This document shows, in pieces, positions 6,168 to 63,629 of a DNA stretch of 64,000 bases. The position numbers and the translations under genes were made by a program. The stretch is from the sequence record MN871449.1; one strand, 5' to 3'. The notes beneath the pieces were generated by a model. That model had not been told where the DNA came from. It saw nothing but the letters and a program-made list of their open reading frames with translations, and did no database searches. How positions within the stretch are numbered: position 1 is the first letter of the stretch; each line of letters opens with the position of its first letter.

Positions 6168-6177
6168 TTTGTTTTCC

Positions 6178-6181: not shown

Positions 6182-6223
6182 ACTATTTTTACAGCCCTAT
6201 TGCCGACAATGAGGTTTCTTGCA

Positions 6224-8980: not shown

Positions 8981-9018
8981 AAGGAGGAGGGGGTTCCCCT
9001 CCTTAAAAGGAAAAATAA

Positions 9019-11184: not shown

Positions 11185-11187
11185 ATT

Positions 11188-11219
11188 AATTGAGAGAGGG
11201 AGTATCCCCTCTCTCAATT
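11188..11219 (+). terminator. Intrinsic terminator
   Basis: AATTGAGAGAGGG-AGTATC-CCCTCTCTCAATT. Confidence 0.8.
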
Positions 11220-11222
11220 TTC

Positions 11223-11226
11223 TATG
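11223..11226 (+). promoter_or_regulatory. Late promoter-like TATG
   Basis: TTTTCTATGAC after terminator. Confidence 0.55.
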
Positions 11227-11256
11227 ACTTCGTCTTATTCACATAGAGGTGTAATG

Positions 11257-13242: not shown

Positions 13243-13436
13243 TGATTTATATCTACAAAGATACTGTGCGAGAGAACGTTTATTTTCTTTCCAGAATTGA
13301 TTTGGGGGAGGCTATCGTTTTCTTTGAAGAAGTAGAAAACTATCAGGAAGCCGCACTTGGGTTCTTATCGGAAAAGGGTCTAGATGGTTCTTTTCTTTTA
13401 GAAGACAGGACTAGCGAAGACGATTCCGGTAGTTGA
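13242..13436 (+). CDS. Small acidic protein coupled to tailspike; possible assembly chaperone (64 aa)
   Basis: ATG overlaps the tailspike TGA; MIYIYKDTVRENVYFLSRIDLGE...; followed by a terminator. Confidence 0.6.
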   Translation: MIYIYKDTVRENVYFLSRIDLGEAIVFFEEVENYQEAALGFLSEKGLDGSFLLEDRTSEDDSGS

Positions 13437-13460
13437 ATTGTTTTATAGGTTGTTCATAGC

Positions 13461-13484
13461 GAGTAGGGCCGATCGGCCCTACTC
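13461..13484 (+). terminator. Intrinsic terminator
   Basis: GAGTAGGGCC-GATC-GGCCCTACTC. Confidence 0.8.
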
Positions 13485-13493
13485 TTGTGTTTT

Positions 13494-13497
13494 TATG
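13494..13497 (+). promoter_or_regulatory. Late promoter-like TATG
   Basis: TTTTTATGAC after terminator. Confidence 0.55.
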
Positions 13498-13543
13498 ACG
13501 ATCTAGATACCCTCTTATTTACCCAGACTATACAGGTACCGAA

Positions 13544-16222: not shown

Positions 16223-16227
16223 TAACA

Positions 16228-16249
16228 CCAGAGAGGAATCCCTCTCTGG
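16228..16249 (+). terminator. Hairpin, weak T-tract (possible leaky terminator)
   Basis: CCAGAGAGG-AATC-CCTCTCTGG. Confidence 0.55.
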
Positions 16250-16268
16250 CTTTCTACAAGGAATAATC

Positions 16269-18092
16269 ATGTTAAATCGTTTAGTCCAACCCAACGGAAG
16301 TACAACAAAAGAGATCATTCTTCGTAACCTTTGTACTCTACTGGGATTAGAAACAAATCAAATAGCGGTACTCGAGACAAATGTCGACCTTTCCAATGTA
16401 AACGTGCTTTTTGATTTTAATACAAACAACTGTTTCGAAACAGTTTCAGCTACGGGAACGTTGCAAAGTTTCACCAGAAACCAAGATGGAACTTTAAACT
16501 TGGTAACGACAACAGGAAGTTTTAACGTTGGCTCATGGAGAGATCTTGGGGTAATTGATCAGGCTTTGAGCGTCGTTGAAAATTTGTTAGCGGAATTTAA
16601 GGGCGAAATTGATAATAAAGGAACAACTGACGGAAACGGGCCCTCTGCTTCTGACGATATTTCCGTTGAAGATCAAATGAGCGTAAAAGGTCAATACGAC
16701 GTCAACCCGGCCCCTGAAGATATTCAAGCGGTAGCTGGCATTAACTTCGGCGGAAAGAAAAATCTGGGTACCATTCTCATTGATAACCGCGGAAGACTGA
16801 AAACCTCAGCTACCGTTGACGGACACCGAACTGCAAGAAACATTCATGTACCTTTTGCTGAAGGCACAGGCTACTGGAGAGGTCCTTATCAAGACGTCAT
16901 TGCGCGATTCCCTGTAGACGGCCAAGCGGATGATGAAACCTCCCCAGCGATCATGTGGAGTTATGATAAAACCACAAATCTCCCAAGAATCTTTACTGTT
17001 TCTCCGCTCCAAACAGGGTTAGTCCCTTTCACTGACGCTGGGCGTTATCGTTGGAGTTGGGCGAACGGCACAGCTGTCAGAGAATTAGCTCAGCTTGATT
17101 CTATTGGACGGAGTCTGGCCAATTCTTACGACACCTACTTCACCGTAGACAGTGCTAATGCTAACTTCATTAATTTCGCAACCATTGTAAACCCATCCAA
17201 TCTTATCGGCGCACGTTTCTCCTGCTTAATTAATATTGGGAACGCGACAAATAGCAATGTTTTGACATATGTTCTCGATGTCAATTTACCTGATGTCGTT
17301 ACCGCGTTTACTCAATACAACATTAATAAGTACGTTCGTTTTACAGGGATTGGTTCGGGTAAGATGTTGGATAATAGCGATGTAAAAAACGCCCTCCAAC
17401 CGGTTATTGGTTTGGTTCAAGATACAACAACCGGAACGGTGAATTTCTACCTAAGAACTCCGGCGCATTCCACTTATTTGAGTTCTACTTGCGTGAACTC
17501 CGGAAATGCAAACCTGATCACATGGAATTGGAATAAATACATGGGCGGGTCACAATTGACGTCGCTCAGTGGTTCGACCCCTGCAGGGATTATTTGGGCG
17601 AACACCGCCTATACAGGGTCAAACTATCGTCGCGTGTTACTCAATGATGGTTCGAGTTTTGACGTACCAGAGGGTTATGCTGTATTGCGTTGTCATTACA
17701 ACCACCCGGCTGATTCGGTTATCAATGCCGCTCCCTTTAAGAAATTCGTTTCTTCTTTTTGTTACGCCACCAATTTTGAAAGTGGTGTTGATTCATTAAC
17801 ATGCACAATACCGAGTCTTAATTTCACGATCACAGGTGCTGATCTTGCGACAGATATGCCTTGGCAGATAAGGCTACCTCAGATACCAAATAATGCTAAC
17901 AGTTATCGATACGTTATTGGTGCAACGGATACAACTGCACATACATTTGCGTTTAGCGTTAGGCAAGTCCTTACTACTGCCACACTGAATACAACAACTA
18001 ACGCGATCACGGTAACAGAAGCGTTGAGTAGCTCCCCAGTAGATCTGGGCCCGGCAGTTTGGATAGACGTGTTGGTAAAACTCGCAAATTAA
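16269..18092 (+). CDS. Tail fibre/spike with Kuttervirus-type head
   Basis: MLNRLVQPNGSTTKEIILRNLCTLLGL..VDLS..VLFD head related to 9019 and to CBA120 TSP heads; beta-rich body. Confidence 0.75.
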   Translation: MLNRLVQPNGSTTKEIILRNLCTLLGLETNQIAVLETNVDLSNVNVLFDFNTNNCFETVSATGTLQSFTRNQDGTLNLVTTTGSFNVGSWRDLGVIDQALSVVENLLAEFKGEIDNKGTTDGNGPSASDDISVEDQMSVKGQYDVNPAPEDIQAVAGINFGGKKNLGTILIDNRGRLKTSATVDGHRTARNIHVPFAEGTGYWRGPYQDVIARFPVDGQADDETSPAIMWSYDKTTNLPRIFTVSPLQTGLVPFTDAGRYRWSWANGTAVRELAQLDSIGRSLANSYDTYFTVDSANANFINFATIVNPSNLIGARFSCLINIGNATNSNVLTYVLDVNLPDVVTAFTQYNINKYVRFTGIGSGKMLDNSDVKNALQPVIGLVQDTTTGTVNFYLRTPAHSTYLSSTCVNSGNANLITWNWNKYMGGSQLTSLSGSTPAGIIWANTAYTGSNYRRVLLNDGSSFDVPEGYAVLRCHYNHPADSVINAAPFKKFVSSFCYATNFESGVDSLTCTIPSLNFTITGADLATDMPWQIRLPQIPNNANSYRYVIGATDTTAHTFAFSVRQVLTTATLNTTTNAITVTEALSSSPVDLGPAVWIDVLVKLAN

Positions 18093-18101
18093 GAGGTTTA
18101 G

Positions 18102-19829
18102 ATGAACTATTATTACATTGATCCTACCGTATCAGTGAACGGTACAGGGACAAAAGACTCACCATTTAAAACGTTTTCTGCATTGATTGCACAAGGTTTC
18201 AGTCACCCTTGTACTATTGCACTAAAAGCAGGGACAACTATTTATGAGAACGTTAATTTTGGCTTAACCTCTTTGTACAACACAACGGGGACCATGTCTT
18301 ATATTACAAGTTATGGGACTGGACCAAAACCAAAATGGATTAACACAGACTATTTTAAAGCTGCCACTGCGCTCGATGGGTATAGCTATCGTGCAATGCA
18401 TTTGACCGCACGTAAGGTACAAAGCGTTACCGTCAGCGGAATAGAGTTTTATACCCGAAACAATCTTGTTTCGGTCGATAATAACAGTAGCTGTTTTATT
18501 TGGTTTGAATTGCCACCGGTAACTGTGGAAACTGATGTCGACGTATGGATTGATAATTGTAAATTTATTAGCGATCCGATTGGCAGAAGCGGAAATCATA
18601 AAGACTATGATTCCGCCGTCAATATACGTTTAGATGGTGCCGCCACAAATAGGGCGAATGTTTTTGGTGTCAGAAATTCTTCATTTTTCAATGTAGCGAG
18701 ATCCATTAACATCGTAGGGAACCATTGGAAAGCAGATGATATTACTGACAACTCTAAAGGGACGTATTATTCTCGCGGGGTCAAAGTAGAGAATATTGAG
18801 ATGACAGGAATCTCAAAAGGAGGCTGTCAGTTTGCTGGCGTGGAGTCTTTAAACTCCGCCTACGTTGTGGACAAATATCAGTCAGTCATGCGGAATATTA
18901 CGTATTCAAAATACCGATGGGATAACGCGTTAGAGAACACTGAAACGCTATATGCCGATGCGGGGTTTTGGACATGGCGTTGTAATCGAATCATGATTGA
19001 AAATATTTTCGGCGGTGGTATGCACCCTTCGGTTACAGATAATGAAATCATTGATTTTGATTACTGTACGTGGGATTCTGTGGCAAGAAATATCATTGGC
19101 TTCAATAATGGCGCCTCAATTCTATTTATGGGCAATTCTTCTACAAGTGTACAAGGTGGAGCACGAGCGGCGTACGCCCCCTATTCGGGCACTTATACAC
19201 AGGCGCAATGGTTCTACGATCGAAGGAATGGCCAAGGTAACAATGTTGTTGAGTTTTCGTTCTTTTTCAATGACGGTATTCAACGATTACCATATCCTTC
19301 TTCCGGTTACGACTATTGCACCAACATTCGTTCTGGTAACATTAATTACAACAATGTGGTCAGGAACTGCGTCTTTATTGACACCGTTTCTCGAACCAGT
19401 AAATATCTCGCTAGTAATAATAATTTCCCGTTGTTACAGGGTGAAGTTCCTCGATTAGTTATTCAGGACTCGGTCTATTACGCCAGATATAATGACGGTT
19501 TAAATATTCTTAAACCTATAACAGACACGGTCAATTACAGTAAAGCAGCCACTGTTTTAACTAACGTTGTTGCTTTTTCACAAGTATGGTCAGCAGCTGA
19601 CATTACAGCCGCCGCTGCCGCCGTGCAATTAGCAGGAACGTGCACCAATGTTAATATTACCGATCCTAAAATCGGTTATATTCCATCTCAACCACCAGTG
19701 TCCGTTGCAAGTGCAAGAAAGATTAAAACTATGCCAGGTACTGTTTTGAAAGGGTCGGGATCTAATACTACCACCACCGATATCGATGGGAATTTTATTA
19801 ATGATATTTGGTGGATGAAAATTACTTAA
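18102..19829 (+). CDS. Anchorless right-handed beta-helix (polysaccharide lyase-like) protein
   Basis: Begins directly with YYIDPTVSVNGTGTKDSPFKT (Pel9/DUF1565-like entry motif); DNEIIDFD and FNN beta-helix repeats. Confidence 0.75.
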   Translation: MNYYYIDPTVSVNGTGTKDSPFKTFSALIAQGFSHPCTIALKAGTTIYENVNFGLTSLYNTTGTMSYITSYGTGPKPKWINTDYFKAATALDGYSYRAMHLTARKVQSVTVSGIEFYTRNNLVSVDNNSSCFIWFELPPVTVETDVDVWIDNCKFISDPIGRSGNHKDYDSAVNIRLDGAATNRANVFGVRNSSFFNVARSINIVGNHWKADDITDNSKGTYYSRGVKVENIEMTGISKGGCQFAGVESLNSAYVVDKYQSVMRNITYSKYRWDNALENTETLYADAGFWTWRCNRIMIENIFGGGMHPSVTDNEIIDFDYCTWDSVARNIIGFNNGASILFMGNSSTSVQGGARAAYAPYSGTYTQAQWFYDRRNGQGNNVVEFSFFFNDGIQRLPYPSSGYDYCTNIRSGNINYNNVVRNCVFIDTVSRTSKYLASNNNFPLLQGEVPRLVIQDSVYYARYNDGLNILKPITDTVNYSKAATVLTNVVAFSQVWSAADITAAAAAVQLAGTCTNVNITDPKIGYIPSQPPVSVASARKIKTMPGTVLKGSGSNTTTTDIDGNFINDIWWMKIT

Positions 19830-31771: not shown

Positions 31772-32983
31772 ATGTTTGACTTAGGCGTAGTAATCGGTAA
31801 ATTCGCGCCCCTTACGTTGGGGCACATCAACTTAATCACAGAGGCTGCTGTGCAGTCTAAGCATGTCCTCGTCATTCTTTCCCACGACCAACGTTGGCTG
31901 GATAAACAATCGCCACGAGACCAAAAGGTACTCAACTTCAAAAATCGTCTGCGCTGGCTGCAACAAACTTACGCGGATACAGAACACGTCACGATCGATT
32001 TCATTGACGAGGCTTCTGTACCGGAATACCCTAACGGTTGGAAAGAATATGCTGCTCTGCTCGGCGCTAAGATTTTCAACGAGGCGGGTAGATTGGCAGC
32101 TAACCACAGTCAGGCGCAGAGCATTGCTATTTTCAGTAGCGAGCTGGATTACGATGAAAAATACAAAACGCACCTTGGTTTTGTAGAACACGTTATCGTT
32201 GACAGCAATCGTACCCGCGTCCCCATCTCTGCGACCATGATCCGTGAAAACCTTTACGACCATTGGGAATATCTCCCGAGTATTGTTCGTAAAGATTATT
32301 GTTTGCGGGTGGTCGTATTAGGTGTTGAGAGTTCTGGGAAAAGTTCCCTCGTCAAGAACCTCGCCAAACTCTACAATACCAGCTGGGTTGAAGAGTACGG
32401 TCGTACGTACTGTGAAACGGTCTTAGCTGGTTCGGAAGCGACTCTCCGTAGTTCTGACTACCCGTTGATTGCGTATCGTCACAAAGAGCTGGAGGAGGAA
32501 GCATTACGTACTTCTAATCGACTCTGTTTCATCGATACGAACGCCTTCATTACGGAATATTACCATCGGCTGTACGAGGGTAAACCTAACCCTATTGTTT
32601 CTGCTATCGCGGCTGAAGAGCATTACGATCTCGTGTTGATTCTTTCGCCGGAAGTACCATGGGTCGATGATGGTCTGCGGCTGAATCCTGACCGCGAGAA
32701 AACAGAGAGTCTCTTCCAACAAATGCTTTGGGAATTTAAAAACCAAACACCATGGGGGCGCACTGTATTCATTAAAGGGGACTCTTACAAAGGTCGTTTA
32801 GATCAATCACGTGAAGCGGTTGATAACTTGTTATCCGGTAACGGCACTGCCGGCCAGAGCGCTCCAGAAATTCCAAATAAGTTCCCTCCTGCTGCCAGCG
32901 GTGGTAACTTTGATAAAGATTGGAGTATGGTAGAAAGCATCGAGGCTGGTTCTCATCAGAACCCCGCTGATTGGGGTGGATGA
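31772..32983 (+). CDS. nadR: NadR-type NMN adenylyltransferase / ribosylnicotinamide kinase (no HTH)
   Basis: GKFAPLTLGH (HxGH-like), ISATMIR, Walker A GVESSGKS, EYGR, DT-containing kinase motif, WVDDGLR. Confidence 0.93.
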   Translation: MFDLGVVIGKFAPLTLGHINLITEAAVQSKHVLVILSHDQRWLDKQSPRDQKVLNFKNRLRWLQQTYADTEHVTIDFIDEASVPEYPNGWKEYAALLGAKIFNEAGRLAANHSQAQSIAIFSSELDYDEKYKTHLGFVEHVIVDSNRTRVPISATMIRENLYDHWEYLPSIVRKDYCLRVVVLGVESSGKSSLVKNLAKLYNTSWVEEYGRTYCETVLAGSEATLRSSDYPLIAYRHKELEEEALRTSNRLCFIDTNAFITEYYHRLYEGKPNPIVSAIAAEEHYDLVLILSPEVPWVDDGLRLNPDREKTESLFQQMLWEFKNQTPWGRTVFIKGDSYKGRLDQSREAVDNLLSGNGTAGQSAPEIPNKFPPAASGGNFDKDWSMVESIEAGSHQNPADWGG

Positions 32984-32987: not shown

Positions 32988-33131
32988 ATGACTCAACAAC
33001 GGCGTACGCAACGCAAAATAAAGCGGATGTTAGGCGATAACTATCGCTTTTACCACGCTGTATTTGGCGACAAACTTAATCTGAGATCCGCAAGTTACAT
33101 CTCAACTTTTCTCGAAGGATTTAATAGATGA
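32988..33131 (+). CDS. 47-aa basic protein between nadR and pnuC (not in ORF track)
   Basis: MTQQRRTQRKIKRMLGDNYRFYHAVFGDKLNLRSASYISTFLEGFNR*; ATGA overlap with the pnuC start. Confidence 0.55.
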   Translation: MTQQRRTQRKIKRMLGDNYRFYHAVFGDKLNLRSASYISTFLEGFNR

Positions 33132-33817
33132 ACTCATTGGTAATGAAAACTTTCACTGACTTTGCGCACTGGAAGAAAGTCGAATACTTTTGGCTGATCG
33201 TAGCGTTAATCGTCGTCGGATTAGGGAGCTGGCAAGCCAGTCCGTTAGAATTCACGGCAGCGCTGACTAACGTCGTCTGCGTGATTCTGGTGGCGAAGGG
33301 TCGCGTCTCTAATTATTACTGGGGGACGATTGGCGTAATTACCTACGGTATTGTTTCGTACAATACCGGCCTTTATGCCAATGCGGCGTTGAACGCTATT
33401 TACCTTCCCATGCAGTTTATCGGTATTTATTACTGGACGAAAGACCTGGGCAAAACTCCAGCCAAAGCTGACGTAGCGGTTAAAACGATCACTTTACGTG
33501 ACGTGATAACTTATCTGGTTGTTGGGGTTATCTTCTGGTATGGCCTGACCGAATACCTGAAAACTACGCAGGATCCGTTTCCTGCATTAGACGCGTTCTG
33601 CTTAGTCGCATCGCTCATCGCCATGTGGATGATGATCAAGCAGCAGCCAGAGCAATGGATTCTCTGGATCATTATCAACTGCGTCACGATTTATCTGTGG
33701 GTGATCCCGGCGCTTAATCAACCGGGTTCATGGGCGCAGGTGGCACAGTGGGCAGTATTCTTGATGAATGCTTTCTACGGCCTTTGGAAGTGGTATATCA
33801 CCAAAACCAACAAATAA
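33128..33817 (+). CDS. pnuC: Nicotinamide riboside transporter PnuC
   Basis: LEFTAALTNVVCVILVAKG..NY.WG, GLYA..L, G.YYW, P.LDA...SLIA.W.M.....E.W.LW. Confidence 0.92.
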   Translation: MNSLVMKTFTDFAHWKKVEYFWLIVALIVVGLGSWQASPLEFTAALTNVVCVILVAKGRVSNYYWGTIGVITYGIVSYNTGLYANAALNAIYLPMQFIGIYYWTKDLGKTPAKADVAVKTITLRDVITYLVVGVIFWYGLTEYLKTTQDPFPALDAFCLVASLIAMWMMIKQQPEQWILWIIINCVTIYLWVIPALNQPGSWAQVAQWAVFLMNAFYGLWKWYITKTNK

Positions 33818-45281: not shown

Positions 45282-45674
45282 ATGGCCTTTGAAAAGTTTG
45301 TTCCGAAGACCAATAAACTTCCTAACCTAAAACCGGTCTATCTCCGTATTGCACCAGGCGGGAGTTGTTACCTCTCCGCAGGGTTCAGGGACTTACAGCC
45401 TGAACCTTATTCGTCGCTCGAATTCGAATACGACCCTATCACGTTAGAGTTTCGTTTTCGGGTAGGGAAAGATTACCTGTATAAAGTGCTCTCTGGTGCG
45501 TTTTCGCTTCCGGCCGAATTAACCCGGCTGATTACTTCCCGGAGCGGAACGAGGTATAACCGGATGTTCTATTACCGTATCATTGAGCAATCGGAAGGTT
45601 GGTTTACCGGGGAATTCGTAAGTGTGAATAAAGCCCCTAAACACTATAAAATCGCTAAAGAGGAAAAAGAATAG
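45282..45674 (+). CDS. Hypothetical protein, dispersed paralog family
   Basis: MAFEKF start; paralog of 43679 and 62745. Confidence 0.7.
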   Translation: MAFEKFVPKTNKLPNLKPVYLRIAPGGSCYLSAGFRDLQPEPYSSLEFEYDPITLEFRFRVGKDYLYKVLSGAFSLPAELTRLITSRSGTRYNRMFYYRIIEQSEGWFTGEFVSVNKAPKHYKIAKEEKE

Positions 45675-47053
45675 TGAAACAGTATCTCGATCTACTACGT
45701 GAAATTATCGAAACCGGTCGTCAGCGAGGAGACAGGACGGGAACGGGGACGATTTCTATTTTTGATGCGAAACTGAAGTACGACCTTTCGACCGGGGAAT
45801 TCCCTCTGCTCACCACGAAGTTCGTTCCGCGTAAATCTGCGTGGTTTGAGTACAAGGCAATGTTAAACGGGGAACTCCACCTCGATACCATGGTGGAGAA
45901 TAATGTCAAGTTCTGGGACCCGTGGCGTTTAGAAGCTGACGTGGTGAAAGAAGTTCCTCTGGAAAACTACGAGCGCCTGAAGTGGCTTGAAGAGAACAAC
46001 AAAGAAGCTCACATCGAGTTTTACAGCAAAGGGATCTCCATTCAGCCTGTTGAAGACGGCCATCGTTGGCTAGATGAAAAAGGTGTACCGCGTACTCGCC
46101 AGGTCACCGTGAACAAAGCGGGTGACCTTAATGCCCCTTACGGGTCAGCATGGCGAAACTTCTCCGAGAATCCATTAGAGAAGAAGGGCGTTGACCAAAT
46201 CGCGTATGCGCTCGATCTCCTACGGAACAATCCGGAATCGCGTCGTATCCTGATCTCGGCGTGGAACCCGCTTTGGATGCCGGAAGAAACGAAAGAAGTT
46301 ACTCTCAGTAGTGACGAGATGTGGGAACATTTAAAAACTCACAGTCCGGACCTTTATGCTATTTTCTGGCCGCGCCTGGAATATCATGGCAAGACCGATA
46401 ACTGCGAAGAGTTCTTAGCAAGTCATGGTGTACCACGCACTAAGACCGTTAAGGTTACGCCGCAGGAAAATATTGTGGAGGGTAAACCATGCCTTACCCC
46501 GTGTCATTTCCTGGTAGAGTTCTACGTAGAAGAGATGACATTGAGCGAGCGGTTAAAATGGTGCAGGAACAATGCTAACCCGTACTTCCAGGATCTTTGG
46601 GAAGACCATATGTCGGACTGCTACAGCGAAGAACATTGTGACCAGCCGAAAATGTCCCCTGAGCGTAAAGCGGAATGGTTGACGGAGAACCACGTACCGA
46701 CGCAGTGGCTGAGTTTGAAATACAGTATGCGGAGCTGTGACACAATGACCGGTGAGCCCTTTAACCAGGCTTTCTACGCCTTCATGTTGCTGTCATTTGC
46801 TCATGAGCTCGGTATGGCGCCCAATAAGCTGGTTGGTAATCTGACTAACGTCCATATCTACAATAATCAGTTAGAGGAAGCTAAGTTACAGTTAACTCGC
46901 GAGCCTTACAAACCGGTTGAGTGTTACGTTCGCTCTGAGCACTACTATAACTCAGAGATGCCGAAGAAAGGGTTGTTTGAACTCACCTATGAAGATTTCG
47001 TCTTCACTGAGTACAAGCATCACCCAGCCATTAAATTACAGGTGTCGGTATGA
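45674..47053 (+). CDS. thyA: Thymidylate synthase with three large insertions
   Basis: DRTGTGT, FPLLTTK, YG..WR, DQI, SRR..SAWNP, PCH, RSCD..G.PFN, HIY. Confidence 0.96.
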   Translation: MKQYLDLLREIIETGRQRGDRTGTGTISIFDAKLKYDLSTGEFPLLTTKFVPRKSAWFEYKAMLNGELHLDTMVENNVKFWDPWRLEADVVKEVPLENYERLKWLEENNKEAHIEFYSKGISIQPVEDGHRWLDEKGVPRTRQVTVNKAGDLNAPYGSAWRNFSENPLEKKGVDQIAYALDLLRNNPESRRILISAWNPLWMPEETKEVTLSSDEMWEHLKTHSPDLYAIFWPRLEYHGKTDNCEEFLASHGVPRTKTVKVTPQENIVEGKPCLTPCHFLVEFYVEEMTLSERLKWCRNNANPYFQDLWEDHMSDCYSEEHCDQPKMSPERKAEWLTENHVPTQWLSLKYSMRSCDTMTGEPFNQAFYAFMLLSFAHELGMAPNKLVGNLTNVHIYNNQLEEAKLQLTREPYKPVECYVRSEHYYNSEMPKKGLFELTYEDFVFTEYKHHPAIKLQVSV

Positions 47054-50943: not shown

Positions 50944-52323
50944 ATGCTCGAACAACTAATGTCATTTTACGACCATATTCTTTCTAACTTTAAAGACTAC
51001 CCTATGGCACAGAATGCAATTGTCGCCGCGAGTTCCATTGCGGTGTCAGGGGCGATTGGTTGGGGGTTAATCAAAACGCCCAAGGCGGTAGCACAATGGG
51101 TCAAACGTCAGTTTGTTACTAGTTTGGTTTTTAACACCTCTGGAACCAACTGGAGTAATTATAACTCCGAACAATATGGGGCATTCCTGAAATGGTTTGC
51201 TAAGAATAGTTGGTTCCATTGGAGTAGGACGATAACTATTGATGGCGACGTGAATGGAGAGTCCGCCGCAGTGGGGCCTGGTGTGGGGTCACATTTCTTT
51301 CTTCATAAGGGCACTGTGTTTGTTTTCTCTATCACGGAAATTGATGCTAACGCTGCGAGTAATTCGAAATACCGTCTTAGCATTAGTAAATTCGGTCGCA
51401 GCCATAAACCTATCTTAAACCTGATGGATGAGTTTATGCTGAAAGACACGGGTAAAGACAACATACGGACATTTGTCAATACTACCGACAGTTGGAATTA
51501 TTTGTGCCGACTGAAGAAAAGAGACCTTAAAACCATAGTCGTTACGGATAAAGTCCAGCGCGAGTTAATCGACCCTATCTTCGATTTTAATAAGAGTAAA
51601 GACTGGTACGAATCACGAGGACTGGCTTATAAGTTCACAGTGTTGTTATACGGTTTACCAGGCACCGGAAAGAGCAGTTTGATTTCGGCATTAGCGGCCG
51701 CGTTAGGGCGCGATATTCATATCCTCAAACCCGCCGGTGGATTACAATACCAAGCGCTTTTCCAACGAGCAGCTGGCGGGGTTGTGATTATCGAGGATAT
51801 TGATACGTATTCGTTCACGAAAGCGCGGAGTAAAGAAAAGGTTATCATTGACTTAAAAGAGGGAAACAAACCGGAAAACCCAGAAGAACTCAAAAATACC
51901 CCTTTCGTCGTTGAAGAACAAAGTTCTGACGATAAAGCAATGGACGAGTACCTAAACGGTAGCTTGTCAGATTTCCTCAACGCGTTAGACGGCGTCTTGC
52001 GGTTGAATGATGTTATCGTTTTCCTGACGACTAACCGCCCTGAGAAACTTGACGATGCGCTGCTGCGGGACGGGAGAATAGACGTCAGGGCTGAAGTAGA
52101 AGTATTAGGCGATAAAGAAATTCGTCAGTTCTTCAAAATGGCATTCCCTGATACGGAACCTAGTAATAACCTTCCTTTCTCTCCTTTACCCGGTGCATCT
52201 GTTCAAGCGCTTTTCATGCTGAACAAACATGACCCGGTAGCCTATGAAAACGCGCTACGGACGTACGACGTCACTAAACCTGTCGAAGCAGTAAGTTATA
52301 ACGTCTTAAAAGCTGTAAGTTAA
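50944..52323 (+). CDS. BCS1-like AAA+ ATPase
   Basis: N-terminal TM and BCS1_N-like region; WY..RG..YK..LLYG.PGTGKSS; IEDID; LNALDG; TTN.PEKLD.ALLR.GRID. Confidence 0.9.
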   Translation: MLEQLMSFYDHILSNFKDYPMAQNAIVAASSIAVSGAIGWGLIKTPKAVAQWVKRQFVTSLVFNTSGTNWSNYNSEQYGAFLKWFAKNSWFHWSRTITIDGDVNGESAAVGPGVGSHFFLHKGTVFVFSITEIDANAASNSKYRLSISKFGRSHKPILNLMDEFMLKDTGKDNIRTFVNTTDSWNYLCRLKKRDLKTIVVTDKVQRELIDPIFDFNKSKDWYESRGLAYKFTVLLYGLPGTGKSSLISALAAALGRDIHILKPAGGLQYQALFQRAAGGVVIIEDIDTYSFTKARSKEKVIIDLKEGNKPENPEELKNTPFVVEEQSSDDKAMDEYLNGSLSDFLNALDGVLRLNDVIVFLTTNRPEKLDDALLRDGRIDVRAEVEVLGDKEIRQFFKMAFPDTEPSNNLPFSPLPGASVQALFMLNKHDPVAYENALRTYDVTKPVEAVSYNVLKAVS

Positions 52324-56581: not shown

Positions 56582-57898
56582 ATGGACAAGCACGCTTTTT
56601 TCTCTGGATCTCTCTCTGATAACGCACCTATTAAATCATTGAATGATATCTTCGAATCGTTCGGCGAAGCTTACGGGAGCTACGCACGTTTCGTAGGCAA
56701 TAACGAGGAAGAAATTCGCGTCAATAAAATGGTACGTCATTTCCTGACTGCAAATCGACTCCCTATCTTCAACATCGATACCGATCGAATGTTCGATCAG
56801 AATAAATACTACTTCGAATCCACGCAGTGGTTAACTGCGTTCCTGGAAAAACATCGCTTCTTCCAGCACGACGATGACCAGTTCATTGGACTGGATAAAT
56901 ACAATCGTCCGATCGCCTGTATTCGTATTCAAAGCGACATCAGGTCTAACCTCTCTATCGAAGGTATGATGGCGAAAGATATCTACGACGATCTGTTGAT
57001 TCAGATCCAAGAAAATATCAAAATCGATCACCGTACTGACGAAACGAAAGAGGAATTTTATTATTCTGAAGTCGTTATTCGGAAAACGCCAATGGGTGAA
57101 ATGACTCACCTTGAACCCAGAGTCATGCGTCATAGCGGCGAAACGAAGAAGGAATTCTATCCGTTCCTGAACGGCGGTGTGGAAGCGCTCATCGAAGACT
57201 TTATTCAGTCTGATGAATCGGTTCTGATTCTCATGGGTGAACCCGGTACCGGGAAATCGACCGCCATTTCCGCTGCCTGCGTGGCGCTGAACCTTTTCCC
57301 GATCTACGCGAAGAAAACTGAGGTCCTCGAAAACCCAGAATTCATCTCTAAGATCTTCGCGTTCAGCGACGACAAAATGGAAAGGGTTGAAATCTCCAGT
57401 GGTGAAAATGCGCGTTATGAACTTTTCAAAGACCGTTCGCATTTTGAAAATACCCGTAATATGCTGACGCTGCCAAACAGCCACGATGCGAAAACCCGTA
57501 AAGAGCCTACCTTCCCAATCGTGATTGTGGAAGATGGGGATATCCTCTTACGTCCGCGTGCTGACGGTAACACGATGATGTCAGAATTGCTGAACGAAAC
57601 CGACGGCGTAGGGAGCGCCACTACGCGTAAAATCATTATCACGACTAACCTGACCGACAAATCGAAAATCGAACCGGCACTGATGCGCGATGGCCGTCAC
57701 TATCTTGGCGAGCCGTTACACTTCCGTATGCTGACCCCGATGGAGGCCGTTGAAGCTCGCGCGGCGGCGGGTTTACCGAAGTTTGATGTCGTTCCTAAGA
57801 GCGATATCCCGCTGGCAACGGCGCTGCGTAAGCCGCGCAAGAAAATCTACCTGAAAGAAGGCGAAGTCGTCGTTCAAACAGGGCGTTCTCTGAACTAA
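56582..57898 (+). CDS. AAA+ ATPase, monocistronic early unit
   Basis: GEPGTGKST; IIVEDGD; LLNETDG; IIITTN; PALMRDGR. Confidence 0.9.
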   Translation: MDKHAFFSGSLSDNAPIKSLNDIFESFGEAYGSYARFVGNNEEEIRVNKMVRHFLTANRLPIFNIDTDRMFDQNKYYFESTQWLTAFLEKHRFFQHDDDQFIGLDKYNRPIACIRIQSDIRSNLSIEGMMAKDIYDDLLIQIQENIKIDHRTDETKEEFYYSEVVIRKTPMGEMTHLEPRVMRHSGETKKEFYPFLNGGVEALIEDFIQSDESVLILMGEPGTGKSTAISAACVALNLFPIYAKKTEVLENPEFISKIFAFSDDKMERVEISSGENARYELFKDRSHFENTRNMLTLPNSHDAKTRKEPTFPIVIVEDGDILLRPRADGNTMMSELLNETDGVGSATTRKIIITTNLTDKSKIEPALMRDGRHYLGEPLHFRMLTPMEAVEARAAAGLPKFDVVPKSDIPLATALRKPRKKIYLKEGEVVVQTGRSLN

Positions 57899-57905
57899 GG
57901 CTAAT

Positions 57906-57937
57906 AAAAGAAAGAGGGGTCATTCCCTCTTTCTTTT
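57906..57937 (+). terminator. Intrinsic terminator
   Basis: AAAAGAAAGAGGG-GTCATT-CCCTCTTTCTTTT. Confidence 0.85.
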
Positions 57938-57961
57938 TTTTTGTTTCGATTCGTTTTAAAG

Positions 57962-57985
57962 CCTATATCACTTGAGTGAAGGTAA
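57962..57985 (+). promoter_or_regulatory. Early promoter-like motif CCTATATCACTTGAGTGAAGGTAA
   Basis: After terminator; heads the operon containing the AcrVA2-like gene. Confidence 0.7.
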
Positions 57986-58035
57986 CAAAAATTACTTGGT
58001 CTTTAAATAGTTTGTACTTAACACGGAGATAAAAA

Positions 58036-58536
58036 ATGTCCACTGAATTTCGTTCTGCTGCGGTTTTAAAAACCTTTGTTTCTTCTGAAGTCGCTTTCAA
58101 TGCGATTATGTCCCATGTTAAAGGACAAAAAGAAGCCGTAGAGAAAATGAAAAACAACGTTGTTCATTTAGTCAAAGAACACGTCAATCTTGTCCTTTCG
58201 CTTCTTGAGAAATGTAACAAGACGGGGGAGATCCCTGAGGAGTTCCATATTCATAATTCAGGCAATAATAACTACCGCTTCCAGTTGGACTATGAAAGAG
58301 ACAACGTCAGCGTCATGGCGTGTGTCGATGCTGACTGTGACCTTGTCATGAAGCTCACACTTGACTCGACCGCCACTAAAGAAATCACTGGCGGTATTTG
58401 TCCTTGTGTGAGGGGAGACATCGATATTGAGAAAGTGATGGCAGATGCCTTAGACGAATTGTACCCTGCGGAAAGCAAAGTGATGGTCTCCATCGAGGGT
58501 TCTTTCTTCCGCTTTGAGAACAGCTATGGCAGTTAA
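58036..58536 (+). CDS. Hypothetical early protein
   Basis: First gene after promoter 57962; SD GGAG. Confidence 0.7.
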   Translation: MSTEFRSAAVLKTFVSSEVAFNAIMSHVKGQKEAVEKMKNNVVHLVKEHVNLVLSLLEKCNKTGEIPEEFHIHNSGNNNYRFQLDYERDNVSVMACVDADCDLVMKLTLDSTATKEITGGICPCVRGDIDIEKVMADALDELYPAESKVMVSIEGSFFRFENSYGS

Positions 58537-59619: not shown

Positions 59620-59994
59620 ATGAACACGCTGAAAAACGTCGATGAAAAATTATTCTCTGCTTTTAAACAATCAGATTACGTTATTGGGTTTCTTGTTGGG
59701 AATATCTCGGCGACGCTGCAGAACCCAAAAGCATCTCCGAAATTACATAGTGCTCTTACAGTTGCTGCTGTGCGCGATTTATCTAAAATCGAAGCTTTCG
59801 CTTACGTTTACAAGGAAGAGATTTTGGCGCGAGCCAAAGCTTATTCAACTTCATTAACGAAAATAGAGTATGAAACGCTCGACGAACTTTACCACGCGCT
59901 TGAAAAAGAGTTGAAAGGGGAAGATTTTAGTAATTCAATCTCAAAAATGTTCTCTGGCTTAGAGAAAGTCAGTCTGAAAAACTTAGTTAATTAA
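59620..59994 (+). CDS. Hypothetical protein
   Basis: SD AAGGT. Confidence 0.65.
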   Translation: MNTLKNVDEKLFSAFKQSDYVIGFLVGNISATLQNPKASPKLHSALTVAAVRDLSKIEAFAYVYKEEILARAKAYSTSLTKIEYETLDELYHALEKELKGEDFSNSISKMFSGLEKVSLKNLVN

Positions 59995-59997
59995 CCG

Positions 59998-60603
59998 GTG
60001 AGCGAAATGGAAAACAGCATCGCAGAAAAGGTCATCGCGTTAGAGATCGAATACGGCAAATGGGCAAGAGAAAATCTTTTACGTCAAGATAATTCGATTA
60101 TTGCCTTTGTCTATTCGGTTAAGATGGGCCGTAAAATCTACGAATATGACCACAGTGAAAATATGAACGGGGTTCAGGTCGACTTCCGCCCGACCACGCA
60201 GGAAGAGATGTACAACTGCATCCGCGACTGGACGCATCTTAACCCGAAAGATGCATATTGGTTCATCCCTGTGAACATGTGGTGGACGGTTGTTAGCCCC
60301 CGTACTAAAGAGCACCCGCTACTCGTACCGACTGACAAACTTTTGGTTGGTCACGGTGCGATGGGGTTGGTCTTTACCGAGGGACGGAAGGTCTGTAAAT
60401 CCTACGGTCATGACGTCAAGACGCTTAAATTGACAAAACAAACGTTCACTGCACGTTTAGCAAACAAAGCGGTTTACGACGTTCACGTGCAGGCCAATAA
60501 CCCCTTCCGGCCGCAATCGCTACGAGAGGCGCTTTTCTCTGTCTTTTGCAGTAACGTTGAGAAAGGGATGGAATTGTTTTATAAGGGGATTACGGGTGAA
60601 TGA
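59998..60603 (+). CDS. Hypothetical protein
   Basis: In operon. Confidence 0.65.
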   Translation: MSEMENSIAEKVIALEIEYGKWARENLLRQDNSIIAFVYSVKMGRKIYEYDHSENMNGVQVDFRPTTQEEMYNCIRDWTHLNPKDAYWFIPVNMWWTVVSPRTKEHPLLVPTDKLLVGHGAMGLVFTEGRKVCKSYGHDVKTLKLTKQTFTARLANKAVYDVHVQANNPFRPQSLREALFSVFCSNVEKGMELFYKGITGE

Positions 60604-60859: not shown

Positions 60860-61834
60860 ATGAAAATACTGGAGACAGTGGAGAAAACGCTCTTACCCCG
60901 TTTACGGGCATGGGACGCGAAGGATTTCTTCAATCGTATCCTCACGGAAAAGAAAGGGGAGGTTCCACCGTATTTCTACCCTATCGAAATATGGGGAGAG
61001 AATCGTAACTGGAACAATAAGATCGATTTAACTAACCCGTATTATCGTGAAATCTTTTGGCATATGAGCATGGCGTATTGCTGGCAAATTACTAAACCTG
61101 AATATCAGATCCCTACTGAATTATTACCCGATGTATTGGACTCTGAATTCAACGGTAAATTGCCGCTCAGTGTTTTGAAAACTATCCCTCATTGGACCGG
61201 GTACGTCGACCTTTCAGCGTGCCCTATCAAACACCCTCTCCCGGAGGAACCGACTATCGAAGGGATTTTCCTTTCTACGGTTACACACTGGAGCGGGAAA
61301 GAGGGTCTAACGATCGTTTACCCGTATAATGATAACGGCTTCCCGCAAACGTTATTCTTCCCGTTTGATGAAGGTTTGACACTGGAGGAGGTCATTGCTT
61401 CTGACCCTACTATTGTACGGGCTGCAAAAGAATACAATATCGATACGGTTAAAGCTGTCGATATTCTAATGCGTGACGGGTACCGTGAAACGTACACTAA
61501 GCTACTCAACGTGGCATTGTTTGTTGCGCAGGAATACGAGTTGCAAGACCGCGCTGACTTCCGTAATACCTTTCGACTTACCCAGATGAAACGGTCGGGT
61601 AAACACTATAGCCTACGGTTCCTGAACGCACACCGTAAGTTTCCGGTAGGGGTCGATTACCTCGAAGAAATCGAGAAGCGAAAGAAAGGACAGAAGACGA
61701 CCGGGCGAGCAGCGCATATCAGACGGGCACACTGGCACGGCTATTGGACCGGTGCTCGTAATAGCCCTAATCGCCAACTGAAAATAAAGTGGATTCGTAC
61801 TAGCGTAGTTTCCGGGAGCAGTAAGGAAGACTGA
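60860..61834 (+). CDS. AcrVA2/FinQ-family-like protein (324 aa)
   Basis: Recalled AcrVA2 motifs: W.....Y.....L.........P..V...P.W..YVD.S and C-terminal HIRRxHWHGYW.G.......W....V; similar length (~320 aa). Confidence 0.7.
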   Translation: MKILETVEKTLLPRLRAWDAKDFFNRILTEKKGEVPPYFYPIEIWGENRNWNNKIDLTNPYYREIFWHMSMAYCWQITKPEYQIPTELLPDVLDSEFNGKLPLSVLKTIPHWTGYVDLSACPIKHPLPEEPTIEGIFLSTVTHWSGKEGLTIVYPYNDNGFPQTLFFPFDEGLTLEEVIASDPTIVRAAKEYNIDTVKAVDILMRDGYRETYTKLLNVALFVAQEYELQDRADFRNTFRLTQMKRSGKHYSLRFLNAHRKFPVGVDYLEEIEKRKKGQKTTGRAAHIRRAHWHGYWTGARNSPNRQLKIKWIRTSVVSGSSKED

Positions 61835-61862
61835 TGTATAAAATTCAGAAAGAGGTGAAAAT

Positions 61863-62162
61863 ATGACAAAAGAAAAACAGGAAGAAATGGAAATCCATCA
61901 ACTTTGGATGAAAGGATACGATCAACTTTTTACCGCGAGACACCACGGGACTGACTTACCTCATTACTTTATTCAGTTCCGAGAAAACGGTTTAGACGAC
62001 GAGACCATTGCCGCCGCTTTTTCTGTTCCGGTAGATGATGTCGATCATGATATTAAAATTTATACCGAGGCCACCGAGATTATGAAAAAATCTGATAAGT
62101 TAGCGGAGGCTTGGATCTCTAAAAACGGACATAGCCCGCTATTAGAAGGGTACGATGAGTAG
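61863..62162 (+). CDS. HTH-like small protein (paralog of next)
   Basis: GLDDETIAAAFSVPVDDVDHDI. Confidence 0.65.
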   Translation: MTKEKQEEMEIHQLWMKGYDQLFTARHHGTDLPHYFIQFRENGLDDETIAAAFSVPVDDVDHDIKIYTEATEIMKKSDKLAEAWISKNGHSPLLEGYDE

Positions 62163-62194
62163 TTTGACCCGCCACAGTAAAAAGGTACCTAAGG

Positions 62195-62428
62195 ATGCAA
62201 CGTGACAAATATCTGGCTTACCTGGCCGAGTTTGACGAACTGATGTCACAACTCGAAAATCCGCAGATCGCCCGAACGATGGAGAACGCTGCCAATCATG
62301 GTATGCGAGTAGAAGAGATCGCTTTCTTTTACAACATCCCGGTGGCCTCGGTCGAAAAAGACATTGCGACCCTGAATAAAGTCAGGAATCTAACCACGAT
62401 GATTACTGGAGATTTAAACGAATGCTAA
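62195..62428 (+). CDS. HTH-like small protein
   Basis: GMRVEEIAFFYNIPVASVEKDI. Confidence 0.65.
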   Translation: MQRDKYLAYLAEFDELMSQLENPQIARTMENAANHGMRVEEIAFFYNIPVASVEKDIATLNKVRNLTTMITGDLNEC

Positions 62429-63125: not shown

Positions 63126-63599
63126 ATGGCTAAGAAAGTTGATTTCGAATTGATAGCGCAGACACTAGAGAAAACGTTGATTTCTGAGACCTCGGAAATG
63201 GCGAAACGAATTGATTGGCGACGTGGTACCATTCTCCGCGAATGTCGGACAATCGGGTTTAAAATACCGCGTCAAACCGGTAAGACGAAATGGGTACTCG
63301 ATCGAGTGAAGAAAAACCCTAAGTACTCGATGGTCTTTCTCCCGACAGAAACGCTTCTGGATGACTTTGAGGCGCGTCTCTACGGTGACGCTAATCCACC
63401 GACGGAAAAGGTCAGGGCTATTGCTGGGAAACCGTATGAGCGCGGTTACACTCAGTTTTACCGCGAAGCGCCGATTACGCACGTCTACATTGACGAAGCG
63501 TATTTCTACTTTACGCGCGTTCGCAAAGAAAAGTTCTACGACGCGTTACTGACCAACTTTACATTGTCAGAAGATGTGATCATCTATTTCGTTAATTGA
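63126..63599 (+). CDS. Small P-loop NTPase-fold protein (terminase-ATPase-like motifs)
   Basis: IPRQTGKT Walker A and HVYIDEA Walker B in only 157 aa. Confidence 0.7.
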   Translation: MAKKVDFELIAQTLEKTLISETSEMAKRIDWRRGTILRECRTIGFKIPRQTGKTKWVLDRVKKNPKYSMVFLPTETLLDDFEARLYGDANPPTEKVRAIAGKPYERGYTQFYREAPITHVYIDEAYFYFTRVRKEKFYDALLTNFTLSEDVIIYFVN

Positions 63600-63608: not shown

Positions 63609-63629
63609 GAGAGGGGTTCGTCCCCTCTC
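63609..63629 (+). terminator. Intrinsic terminator
   Basis: GAGAGGGG-TTCGT-CCCCTCTC then T-rich tract. Confidence 0.75.

What the first reader, a model, noticed from the sequence alone, without database searches (positions are those of the whole stretch)
60860..62428. AcrVA2/FinQ-like gene followed by two HTH paralogs in an early operon of a jumbo phage
Seen: a 324-aa protein with YCWQITKPEYQIPTELLPDVLDSEFNGKLPLSVLKTIPHWTGYVDLS and C-terminal AHIRRAHWHGYWTG...KIKWIRTSVVSG. It is followed by two small paralogs with HTH-like cores (GLDDETIAAAFSVPVDDVDHDI / GMRVEEIAFFYNIPVASVEKDI), with no terminator seen between them and the early promoter motif at 57962. Knowledge (recalled): AcrVA2 (~320 aa, contains ..LPDWCVYVDIS.. 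and RPHIRRGHWHGYW.G..VRW) blocks Cas12a biogenesis by co-translational recognition and mRNA destruction, and FinQ is a relative. acr genes are often flanked by HTH aca genes. Inference: enterobacterial hosts rarely carry Cas12a and phiKZ-like nuclei already shield DNA, so this homolog probably silences a different host protein (a defence protein or conjugation factor). That would make it a candidate new translation-coupled anti-defence module.
Basis: partly seen in the sequence, partly recalled or inferred. Interest (0 to 1): 0.82.

Follow-up and report, generated by a model that had tools for sequence, protein, structure and literature searches.

The report
AcrVA2/FinQ-family gene in jumbo phage
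A Klebsiella nucleus-forming jumbo phage carries, in an early-type operon, a well-conserved member of the known AcrVA2/FinQ protein family (proteins that destroy the mRNA of one chosen target while it is being translated); its target here is unknown and almost certainly not Cas12a, and the two small genes after it are acidic distant paralogs rather than typical DNA-binding regulators.

Summary
ORF 60860-61834 (+, 324 aa) is a true AcrVA2/FinQ-family protein. It carries Pfam PF26125 'AcrVA2-like'. Its family profile matches the AcrVA2 crystal-structure sequence at E 1.6e-33, and Foldseek finds only AcrVA2 (probability 1.0). tblastn hits annotated finQ genes on 539 plasmid records. It keeps W79 and the H286/R288/H291 motif needed for AcrVA2 activity, but has Pro at the D89 position. 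The window is 100% identical to Klebsiella jumbo phage KpXa_1, which encodes a nuclear-shell protein. The gene sits between strong terminators, behind a recurrent motif that resembles phiKZ-type early promoters. It is under strong purifying selection (dN/dS 0.06). The N-terminal and middle parts are specific to this phage clade; the C-terminal module is shared family-wide. The two downstream small ORFs are distant paralogs sharing a 37-column core with weak sigma-region-4/LuxR-like resemblance. They are strongly acidic, no operator-like repeat is present, and they are absent beside AcrVA2 homologs outside this clade, so an Aca-like role is unlikely. The idea of a non-Cas12a target is already published for this family, including on 'megaphages'. 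Verdict: a new member of a known kind and a reasonable experimental lead, but not a new system.

The parts
57906..57937 (+). Strong intrinsic terminator ending the upstream AAA-ATPase unit (14-bp stem plus T run)
   Evidence: inverted repeat I1; a terminator is annotated at the orthologous place in FBKp24
57955..57971 (+). Phage promoter-like motif (TTTAAAGCC TATATCAC), one of six copies in the window, all on the + strand and 35-75 nt upstream of ORF starts; resembles the phiKZ-group early-promoter consensus
   Evidence: consensus table in PMC7058600; conserved at the orthologous operon start in FBKp24, MJ359 and L006
58036..60859 (+). Eight tightly packed small ORFs of unknown function upstream in the same unit (166, 113, 86, 88, 62, 124, 201 and 87-100 aa); several are replaced by divergent alleles in phage MJ359
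60860..61834 (+). AcrVA2/FinQ-family gene (324 aa; Pfam PF26125 AcrVA2-like; PHROG 6160)
60860..61669 (+). Codons 1-270: N-terminal and middle domains, conserved inside the jumbo-phage clade (35-93% identity per block) but only 11-23% identical to outside members; presumed target-recognition part. Contains W75 (= AcrVA2 W79) and Pro85 at the AcrVA2 D89 position
   Evidence: inference from 10.1101/2022.11.29.518452
61670..61831 (+). Codons 271-324: C-terminal module conserved across the whole family; presumed ribosome-association/effector part
   Evidence: review PMC13728456
61715..61738 (+). Codons 286-293: H-x-R-R-x-H-W-H motif; H286, R288 and H291 match the residues whose mutation abolishes AcrVA2 activity
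   Evidence: residues
61863..62162 (+). 99-aa acidic four-helix protein (pI 4.8, net -11); its core at residues 36-72 is shared with the 77-aa protein; weak sigma-region-4/LuxR-like resemblance
62195..62428 (+). 77-aa acidic protein (pI 4.6, net -5), distant paralog of the 99-aa protein; sub-threshold hits to ECF sigma region 4; homologs lie next to or near the AcrVA2-like gene in FBKp24, L005 and L006
62422..63599 (+). Three further ORFs of the unit (108, 111-116 and 157 aa), function unknown; syntenic in FBKp24
63609..63629 (+). Strong intrinsic terminator closing the transcription unit

Best explanation
The 324-aa ORF is a functional member of the AcrVA2/FinQ family. It is made early in infection from a phage-specific promoter of the phiKZ-group early type, as part of a unit of about 5.7 kb holding 14 small genes. 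Its mRNA is translated in the host cytoplasm. By analogy with AcrVA2, the conserved C-terminal module (H286/R288/H291) would dock the protein on translating ribosomes. The clade-specific N-terminal and middle domains would recognise the nascent N-terminus of one particular protein, whose mRNA would then be degraded by a recruited host RNase. The target is most likely not Cas12a but a host or competing-element protein that must be newly synthesised during infection. Shown here: family membership, motif retention, purifying selection, operon anatomy and phage type. Inferred: early timing, ribosome-coupled mRNA decay, and the nature of the target. The two downstream small acidic proteins are distant paralogs that recur beside this gene within the clade. 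They are more likely protein-binding early proteins than DNA-binding Aca-type repressors.
For: Homology: E 1.6e-33 to the AcrVA2 sequence in the PDB; Foldseek, only AcrVA2; PF26125 AcrVA2-like; finQ genes on plasmids. Functional residues: W75 156/156, H286 154/156, R288 155/156 and H291 155/156 across 156 family members, all present in the query; their roles come. Mechanism of the prototype. Modularity: the C-terminal block is 35-43% identical to outside members against 11-23% elsewhere, while the clade keeps the N-terminus at 42-80%. Constraint: dN/dS 0.06 with dS 1.9 against FBKp24, and 85% aa identity against 32-61% for most neighbours. Operon and promoter. None of the six motif sites lies in the tail-fibre/structural block at 1-25.6 kb. 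Nucleus-type phage. Small ORFs.
Against: No expression, binding or RNA data exist for this protein, so the mechanism is transferred from a homolog that is only about 16% identical in the structural alignment. The AcrVA2 D89 position is Pro here, where 110 of 156 members have Asp. TM-score to AcrVA2 is only about 0.5, so domain arrangement may differ. Blocking new synthesis does nothing against proteins already present, a limitation the AcrVA2 authors state, and this makes the benefit to a strictly lytic phage unclear. 'Early' rests on motif resemblance, not on transcript data. Gene linkage with the small ORFs may simply reflect inherited synteny.
Confidence: 0.55

Rival explanations
1. It is a genuine anti-Cas12a anti-CRISPR, like AcrVA2 itself.
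For: Homology to AcrVA2 with the activity motif retained. AcrVA2 acts on divergent Cas12a orthologs.
Against: Family members typically occur where Cas12a is absent. The N-terminal and middle domains are only 11-23% identical to non-clade members. The phage encodes a nuclear shell, which shields DNA from DNA-targeting CRISPR nucleases according to the literature cited. From my own knowledge, not tested here, Klebsiella pneumoniae CRISPR systems are type I-E or IV, not V-A.
Confidence: 0.06
2. It works like FinQ in conflict between mobile elements: it lowers expression of genes of a resident conjugative plasmid, prophage or co-infecting phage rather than of a chromosomal defence gene.
For: Direct tblastn hits to annotated finQ genes (E down to 1e-10), with 485 of 539 matching plasmids conjugative. 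FinQ decreases F transfer-gene mRNA. The authors propose a role in conflict between mobile elements.
Against: Identity to FinQ is only 22-28% and excludes the N-terminus (query residues 69/75 onward). No obvious benefit for a lytic jumbo phage is shown.
Confidence: 0.15
3. It regulates the phage's own programme or contributes to general host shut-off, for example by removing particular early phage or abundant host mRNAs, rather than counteracting a defence.
For: It lies in a block of early-type small genes. It is very highly conserved relative to its neighbours, as expected for a core regulatory function.
Against: It is absent from the related nucleus-forming Serratia phages that share the shell protein: compare the organisms (PCH45, 2050HW, Moabite) with those. 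It is therefore accessory, not core. The family spreads widely across plasmids and unrelated phages.
Confidence: 0.1
4. The two small ORFs are Aca-type HTH repressors that bind the operon promoter and auto-regulate the AcrVA2-like gene.
For: They lie directly downstream in the same unit. The core pattern and sub-threshold hits point to sigma-region-4/LuxR-type HTH. They recur beside the gene in clade relatives.
Against: Net charges are -11 and -5, and the putative recognition helix of the 99-aa protein is -5. No HTH family reaches its threshold. Foldseek gives no hit at E <= 0.001. The promoter region has no inverted-repeat operator. The promoter lies 2.9 kb upstream and serves 14 genes. No counterpart lies next to the homolog in Yoloswag or L007.
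Confidence: 0.1

Closest known systems
AcrVA2 (Moraxella bovoculi prophage; PDB 7CI1/7CI2; Marino et al., 10.1101/2022.11.29.518452)
   Same: Same length class (324 vs about 322 aa), same Pfam family PF26125, and co-linear homology over nearly the full length. The same fold is the only significant structural match. W79 and the H286/R288/H291 motif are retained at identical numbering.
   Different: About 16% identity in the structural alignment, TM about 0.5. Pro at the D89 position. Divergent N-terminal and middle domains. Carried by a strictly lytic nucleus-forming jumbo phage of Klebsiella rather than a Moraxella prophage. No acrVA1-like partner was seen. The target is presumably not Cas12a.
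FinQ (fertility-inhibition protein of IncI/F-like conjugative plasmids)
   Same: Homologous: tblastn E 1e-10 to 1e-5 to genes annotated finQ. Same family. Both occur in enterobacteria that lack Cas12a.
   Different: The match covers only residues 69/75-312 at 22-28% identity. It is phage-borne, not plasmid-borne. FinQ's known phenotype, inhibition of F transfer, has no evident meaning for this phage.
AcrVA2-like proteins of huge phages and other phages (PHROG 6160; Al-Shayeb 2020 PMC7162821; Shewanella phage Y11, PMC10846135)
   Same: Phage-borne, uncharacterised family members. Erwinia and Dickeya jumbo phages (Yoloswag, Y3, Alexandra, RisingSun, JA13) have homologs at 22-28% identity.
   Different: The Klebsiella clade (Siatvirus, Maaswegvirus and three metagenomic relatives) forms its own subgroup with a shared N-terminus and its own flanking small acidic proteins.
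Aca (anti-CRISPR-associated) HTH repressors
   Same: Small genes directly downstream of an acr-family gene in one operon, with a helix-turn-helix-like core.
   Different: Acidic rather than basic, no recognised HTH family, no operator repeats, and the promoter is far upstream and of the phage-RNAP type.
Early promoters of phiKZ-like (nucleus-forming) phages
   Same: TTT..A... plus a TATATCAC core followed by ..GTG, compared with TTTRARR_BTATATTACDWHDGTG for 201phi2-1 and TATATTAC for phiKZ (PMC7058600 Table 2). It is placed after terminators at operon starts.
   Different: C instead of T at one core position. No transcript mapping exists for this phage group.

Membership tests
AcrVA2/FinQ family (Pfam PF26125 AcrVA2-like) | Significant sequence/profile match to the family and to AcrVA2 itself | tested here: met
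   PF26125 is precomputed on the identical protein P0001 and named. phmmer vs the PDB gives E 2.8e-7 and the profile gives E 1.6e-33. The family has 4527 representatives at E <= 1e-3. The local Pfam copy lacks this model (0 hits).
AcrVA2/FinQ family (Pfam PF26125 AcrVA2-like) | Three-domain fold of about 320 aa like PDB 7CI1 | tested here: met
   AF2 model pLDDT 81.3, pTM 0.82. Foldseek vs the PDB: the only hits at E <= 0.001 are 7ci2_A, 7ci1_B and 7ci1_A, probability 1.0, TM 0.46-0.54. The moderate TM suggests a different domain orientation.
AcrVA2/FinQ family (Pfam PF26125 AcrVA2-like) | C-terminal H286 / R288 / H291 motif required for mRNA down-regulation | tested here: met
   All three are present at the same numbering and are 154-155 of 156 conserved in the family.
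AcrVA2/FinQ family (Pfam PF26125 AcrVA2-like) | W79 and D89 (moderate-effect residues) | tested here: inconclusive
   The W79 equivalent W75 is present (156/156). The D89 equivalent is Pro85, where 110 of 156 members have Asp and 8 have Pro.
AcrVA2 proper (anti-Cas12a function) | Recognition of the Cas12a N-terminal motif and inhibition of Cas12a | not testable with these tools
The divergent N-terminal and middle domains and the published absence of Cas12a near most homologs argue against it.
AcrVA2 proper (anti-Cas12a function) | Ribosome/polysome association and translation-dependent decay of the target mRNA | not testable with these tools
   Known for AcrVA2 only.
FinQ proper | Encoded on an IncI/F-like conjugative plasmid and inhibits F transfer | tested here: not met
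   The gene lies in a lytic jumbo-phage genome. The plasmid finQ genes are only 22-28% identical. The transfer phenotype is not testable here.
Aca-type regulators (for the 99-aa and 77-aa ORFs) | Recognised HTH DNA-binding domain | tested here: not met
   Pfam and NCBIfam hits are below threshold (Sigma70_ECF E 0.027; TIGR02999 E 0.0019). PDB profile hits are E 0.87-0.95. Foldseek best is E 1.4.
Aca-type regulators (for the 99-aa and 77-aa ORFs) | Operator (inverted repeat) in the promoter of the acr operon | tested here: not met
   Only the terminator hairpin and an 8-nt A/T-rich pair were found at 57900-58060, and none at 61800-62220.
Aca-type regulators (for the 99-aa and 77-aa ORFs) | Positively charged DNA-contacting surface | tested here: not met
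   Net charges are -11 and -5, and homologs range from -7 to -14. The putative recognition helix of the 99-aa protein is -5.
phiKZ-like (chimallin) nucleus-forming jumbo phages (context) | Nuclear shell protein, PhuZ tubulin and split multisubunit RNAP genes | tested here: met
   FBKp24 gp083 matches PHROG 'nuclear shell protein' at E 4e-44 and gp094 matches PhuZ at E 9e-81. An 80%-identical shell homolog is in KpXa_1, the window's own genome. RNAP beta-subunit genes appear. Nucleus formation itself has not been observed for this phage.

The most novel reading that the evidence does not exclude
In this Klebsiella jumbo-phage clade the AcrVA2-like protein has been retargeted to a host protein that must be newly synthesised on infection, for example an induced RNA-targeting or abortive-infection defence factor, the kind of immunity a phage nucleus cannot block. 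The recurrent small acidic sigma-region-4-like paralogs next to it would be working partners (adaptors, decoys or inhibitors of a host transcription or translation factor). Together they would form a new early counter-defence module.
Probability: 0.15. Interest if true: 0.75.

Novelty: new member of a known kind. Interest (0 to 1): 0.4.

Why it matters
AcrVA2 is the only prokaryotic protein known to destroy a specific mRNA after reading the nascent peptide. Thousands of homologs exist without Cas12a, and none of their targets is known. This copy is a clean case to study. It sits in cultured, sequenced, strictly lytic Klebsiella phages, is strongly constrained, is probably expressed early, and has a clade-specific recognition region. 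Finding its target would show whether the family is a general, reprogrammable 'nascent-chain-guided' silencing tool, and what a nucleus-forming phage still needs to suppress in the cytoplasm. As it stands it adds a well-documented member and a context description, not a new principle.

Tried and rejected
- **Libraries with no hit for the 324-aa protein:** the local Pfam-A, NCBIfam and PADLOC scans found nothing. The local Pfam copy predates PF26125, so this is not evidence against membership.
- **BLASTP between the two small ORFs:** it found nothing. Shuffle statistics and profile methods were needed.
- **Deep homolog searches for the small ORFs:** they returned only 2 and 4 clusters, so the profiles stayed shallow. 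PDB profile searches gave only sub-threshold hits, including a designed repeat protein, sigma-E region 4 and ArsR.
- **Structure job for the 77-aa protein:** The last job went to the 99-aa protein instead, so the 77-aa protein has no model.
- **Sigma-70 promoter scan:** matches were at chance level, 11 against 10.9 expected, so host-type promoters were rejected as the explanation.
- **FBKp24 annotated 'promoter' features:** these are sigma-70-style predictions and do not correspond to the motif.
- **Other scans:** tRNA and Rfam scans found nothing. A literature search for 'PF26125' found nothing.
- **Weak fold resemblances:** Foldseek hits of the AcrVA2-like model to DnaK substrate-binding domains and ribosomal protein uS10 (E 0.2-4) were considered and rejected as non-significant.
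Full report
**1. What is there**

The three ORFs exist exactly as described: 60860-61834 (+, 324 aa), 61863-62162 (+, 99 aa) and 62195-62428 (+, 77 aa). The quoted peptides are in their translations.

The window is 100% identical to Klebsiella jumbo phage KpXa_1 (304 kb) and 98.5% identical to KpLz-2_45, genus Siatvirus. All genes in this block are annotated 'hypothetical protein' in the public records.

**2. The 324-aa protein is a true AcrVA2/FinQ-family member**

- A plain phmmer search of the PDB returns one hit, AcrVA2 (7ci1_A, 323 aa), at E 2.8e-7 with two co-linear stretches.
- A profile of nine homologs raises this to E 1.6e-33, covering residues 20-178 and 204-320.
- An AlphaFold2 model (pLDDT 81.3, pTM 0.82) finds only the AcrVA2 crystal structures at E <= 0.001 (7ci2_A at E 2.2e-10, probability 1.0, TM about 0.5). 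No enzyme fold appears.
- In the viral structure library it matches uncharacterised proteins of the Erwinia and Dickeya jumbo phages Yoloswag, JA13 and RisingSun.
- The identical protein in the large database carries Pfam PF26125, named 'AcrVA2-like'. PHROG 6160, of unknown function, matches at E 2e-36.
- tblastn against plasmids hits 539 records, 485 of them conjugative, at genes annotated finQ (E 1e-10 to 1e-5).
- The family is very large: 4527 representatives at 50% identity with E <= 1e-3.

**3. Functional residues**

Marino et al. (10.1101/2022.11.29.518452) showed two classes of AcrVA2 mutant. H286A, R288A and H291A abolish Cas12a mRNA down-regulation while still binding Cas12a. W79A and D89A have moderate effects.

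The alignment with the PDB chain, which is offset by one residue, gives this mapping:

| AcrVA2 residue | Query residue |
|---|---|
| W79 | W75 |
| H286 | H286 |
| R288 | R288 |
| H291 | H291 |
| D89 | Pro85 |

Across 156 diverse family members, W75 is 156/156, H286 is 154, R288 is 155, H291 is 155 and H293 is 154. Position 85 is Asp in 110 members and Pro in 8.

A 2026 review reports that AcrVA2 associates with ribosomes and polysomes through its C-terminal part. It recruits a cellular RNase rather than cutting the mRNA itself (PMC13728456).

**4. Modularity and constraint**

Block-wise identity shows two different patterns:

| Comparison | N-terminal and middle blocks (1-270) | C-terminal block (271-324) |
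|---|---|---|
| Five closest relatives (45-84% overall) | 42-80% in residues 1-60; 35-93% across all four blocks | 46-72% |
| More distant family members | 11-23% | 35-43% |

This fits a conserved effector or docking module joined to a lineage-specific recognition part, as proposed for AcrVA2 versus FinQ.

Against the sister genus phage FBKp24 the gene has dN/dS 0.06 with saturated dS of 1.9, and 85% aa identity. Most neighbouring ORFs are only 32-61% identical; one 62-aa ORF is 94%.

In phage MJ359 the ORFs on both sides are replaced by alleles of 37-49% identity, including the 99-aa ORF at 49.5%. The AcrVA2-like gene and the 77-aa ORF stay at 97-99%. The gene is therefore a stable, constrained element inside a mosaic block.

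**5. Transcription unit**

- Strong intrinsic terminators lie at 57906-57937, after an AAA-ATPase gene, and at 63609-63629. Between them only weak, chance-level terminator-like matches occur (13 found against 8.4 +/- 2.6 expected in the 8-kb scan).
- The motif TTTAAAGCCTATATCAC at 57955-57971 has five relatives in the window with at most 3 mismatches. All are on the + strand, against 0.13 expected by chance.
- All six sites lie 35-75 nt upstream of ORF starts. Three of them, including this one, directly follow a terminator or hairpin. None lies in the tail-fibre/structural block at 1-25.6 kb.
- The motif closely resembles the early-promoter consensus compiled for phiKZ-like phages: TTTRARR_BTATATTACDWHDGTG for 201phi2-1 and TATATTAC for phiKZ (PMC7058600 Table 2).
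- It is conserved at the orthologous operon start in FBKp24, MJ359 and a metagenomic relative whose AcrVA2-like protein is only 50% identical.
- Sigma-70-type matches are at chance level.

'Early operon' is therefore well supported by analogy, but it has not been shown by transcript data.

**6. Phage type**

- FBKp24 was reported to encode tubulin and nucleus-shell proteins (10.1101/2021.03.02.433402).
- Its gp083 matches PHROG 'nuclear shell protein' at E 4e-44, and gp094 matches PhuZ at E 9e-81.
- It carries several split RNAP beta-subunit genes.
- KpXa_1, the window's own genome, has an 80%-identical shell homolog.
- Related shell-encoding Serratia phages (PCH45, 2050HW, Moabite) are not among the phages with an AcrVA2-like gene. 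The gene is therefore accessory.

**7. The two small ORFs**

*Relationship to each other*

- BLASTP sees no similarity.
- The 23-residue cores align with SW score 43 against 23.3 +/- 4.2 for shuffles; 4 of 2000 shuffles reach it.
- hhalign of the two small family alignments gives E 5e-5 (probability 67%) over 37 columns.
- Each family HMM has the other ORF as its only hit below E 0.01 among 648 six-frame segments of the window.
- They are distant paralogs that share one module, not full-length paralogs.

*Is it an HTH?*

- The 99-aa protein folds confidently (pLDDT 92.9) into four helices. The shared core forms a short helix, a turn and a long helix.
- No database hit is significant. The 77-aa protein gives Sigma70_ECF at E 0.027 and TIGR02999 at E 0.0019. 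The 99-aa profile gives sigma-E region 4 at E 0.87.
- The Foldseek top list (E 1.4-3) is dominated by LuxR and sigma-region-4 domains.
- This is a consistent trend, not proof.

*Against a DNA-binding role*

- Net charges are -11 (pI 4.8) and -5 (pI 4.6). Homologs range from -7 to -14.
- The putative recognition helix of the 99-aa protein has net charge -5.
- No operator-like inverted repeat is present.

*Linkage to the AcrVA2-like gene*

- Both families are confined to this phage clade.
- In L005 (AcrVA2-like at 53% identity) the 99-aa homolog lies directly upstream and the 77-aa homolog directly downstream.
- In L006 (50% identity) the directly downstream ORF matches the 77-aa profile at E 8e-6.
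- In FBKp24 the 77-aa homolog lies three genes downstream.
- L007 and Yoloswag have no counterpart.
- The linkage is recurrent, but it may reflect inherited synteny, since other operon genes are also shared.

**8. Interpretation**

- **Shown:** family membership, retention of the activity motif, strong constraint, early-type operon placement, and a nucleus-type lytic phage.
- **Inferred:** the protein acts in the cytoplasm on translating ribosomes and causes decay of the mRNA of one specific nascent protein.
- **The target:** it is unlikely to be Cas12a and is otherwise unknown. Candidates are an infection-induced host defence factor, or a gene of a resident plasmid, prophage or competing phage, as with FinQ. 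Suppressing biogenesis is ineffective against proteins already present, so a newly synthesised or rapidly turned-over target is the logical expectation.
- **The acr-aca reading** of the small ORFs is not supported.

**9. Novelty**

The literature already states that AcrVA2 homologs are widespread on plasmids and 'megaphages', mostly without Cas12a, and may act on other targets. It also states that huge phages encode proteins clustering with AcrVA2 (PMC7162821). A Pfam family exists.

The finding is therefore a new, well-characterised member of a known kind. What this analysis adds:

- the early-promoter context;
- the nucleus-forming host phage;
- the strong constraint within a mosaic block;
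- the Pro at the D89 position;
- the recurrent small acidic paralogs.

Noticed in passing
window 31772-32983 and 33128-33817 (+): Adjacent genes for a nicotinamide-nucleotide adenylyltransferase (PHROG 3462, E 5e-125) and a PnuC-like NMN transporter (PHROG 1880, E 4e-56). This is a phage NAD+ salvage pair that could counter NAD+-depleting defences.
   Followed up: no
window 45674-47053 (+): A 459-aa thymidylate synthase whose PHROG matches split into residues 1-200 and 344-459, leaving an unmatched insert of about 140 aa in the middle. It may be an intein or an inserted domain.
   Followed up: no
window 745-19829 (+): A run of eight large tail-fibre, tail-spike or EPS-depolymerase-like genes sharing an N-terminal module (PHROG 27731). 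This fits the branched tail-fibre apparatus described for the relative phiKp24.
   Followed up: partly
window 50944-52323 and 56582-57898 (+): Two AAA-ATPase paralogs (PHROGs 7485 and 35110). Copies of the early-type promoter motif lie at 52357 and 56516. The second ATPase directly precedes the AcrVA2-like operon, and this arrangement is conserved in FBKp24, MJ359 and L006.
   Followed up: partly
window 63126-63599 (+); L004 5297-5770: The 157-aa last ORF of the unit is annotated 'terminase large subunit' in phage MJ359. It has only a sub-threshold GpA_ATPase hit (E 0.019) and belongs to PHROG 2586 of unknown function, so this is probably a mis-annotation.
   Followed up: partly
L004 (MJ359) 2076-3014 and 4004-4309 compared with window 59620-60603 and 61863-62162: Allelic replacement of the ORFs on both sides of the AcrVA2-like gene (37-49% aa identity with saturated dS), while the gene itself and the rest of the block are 92-100% identical. 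This looks like a local recombination mosaic.
   Followed up: partly
window 60860-61834 (model m7717d66d499d): Below significance (E 0.2-4), the Foldseek list is populated by DnaK/Hsp70 substrate-binding domains and ribosomal protein uS10. This is thematically suggestive for a nascent-chain and ribosome binder, but it is statistically meaningless as it stands.
   Followed up: no
Erwinia phage RisingSun MF459646 128209-129135 (hit H33): The AcrVA2-family homolog in this record is annotated 'putative mycothiosynthase', which is probably an annotation error.
   Followed up: no
L007 2729-3070 (+) and 3123-3488 (-): In the most distant clade relative, an HTH_3-type gene (weak Pfam hit) preceded by a TATATTAC-type motif, and a BubE-family gene, lie just upstream of the AcrVA2-like gene. 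This is a different neighbourhood from the Klebsiella phages.
   Followed up: no
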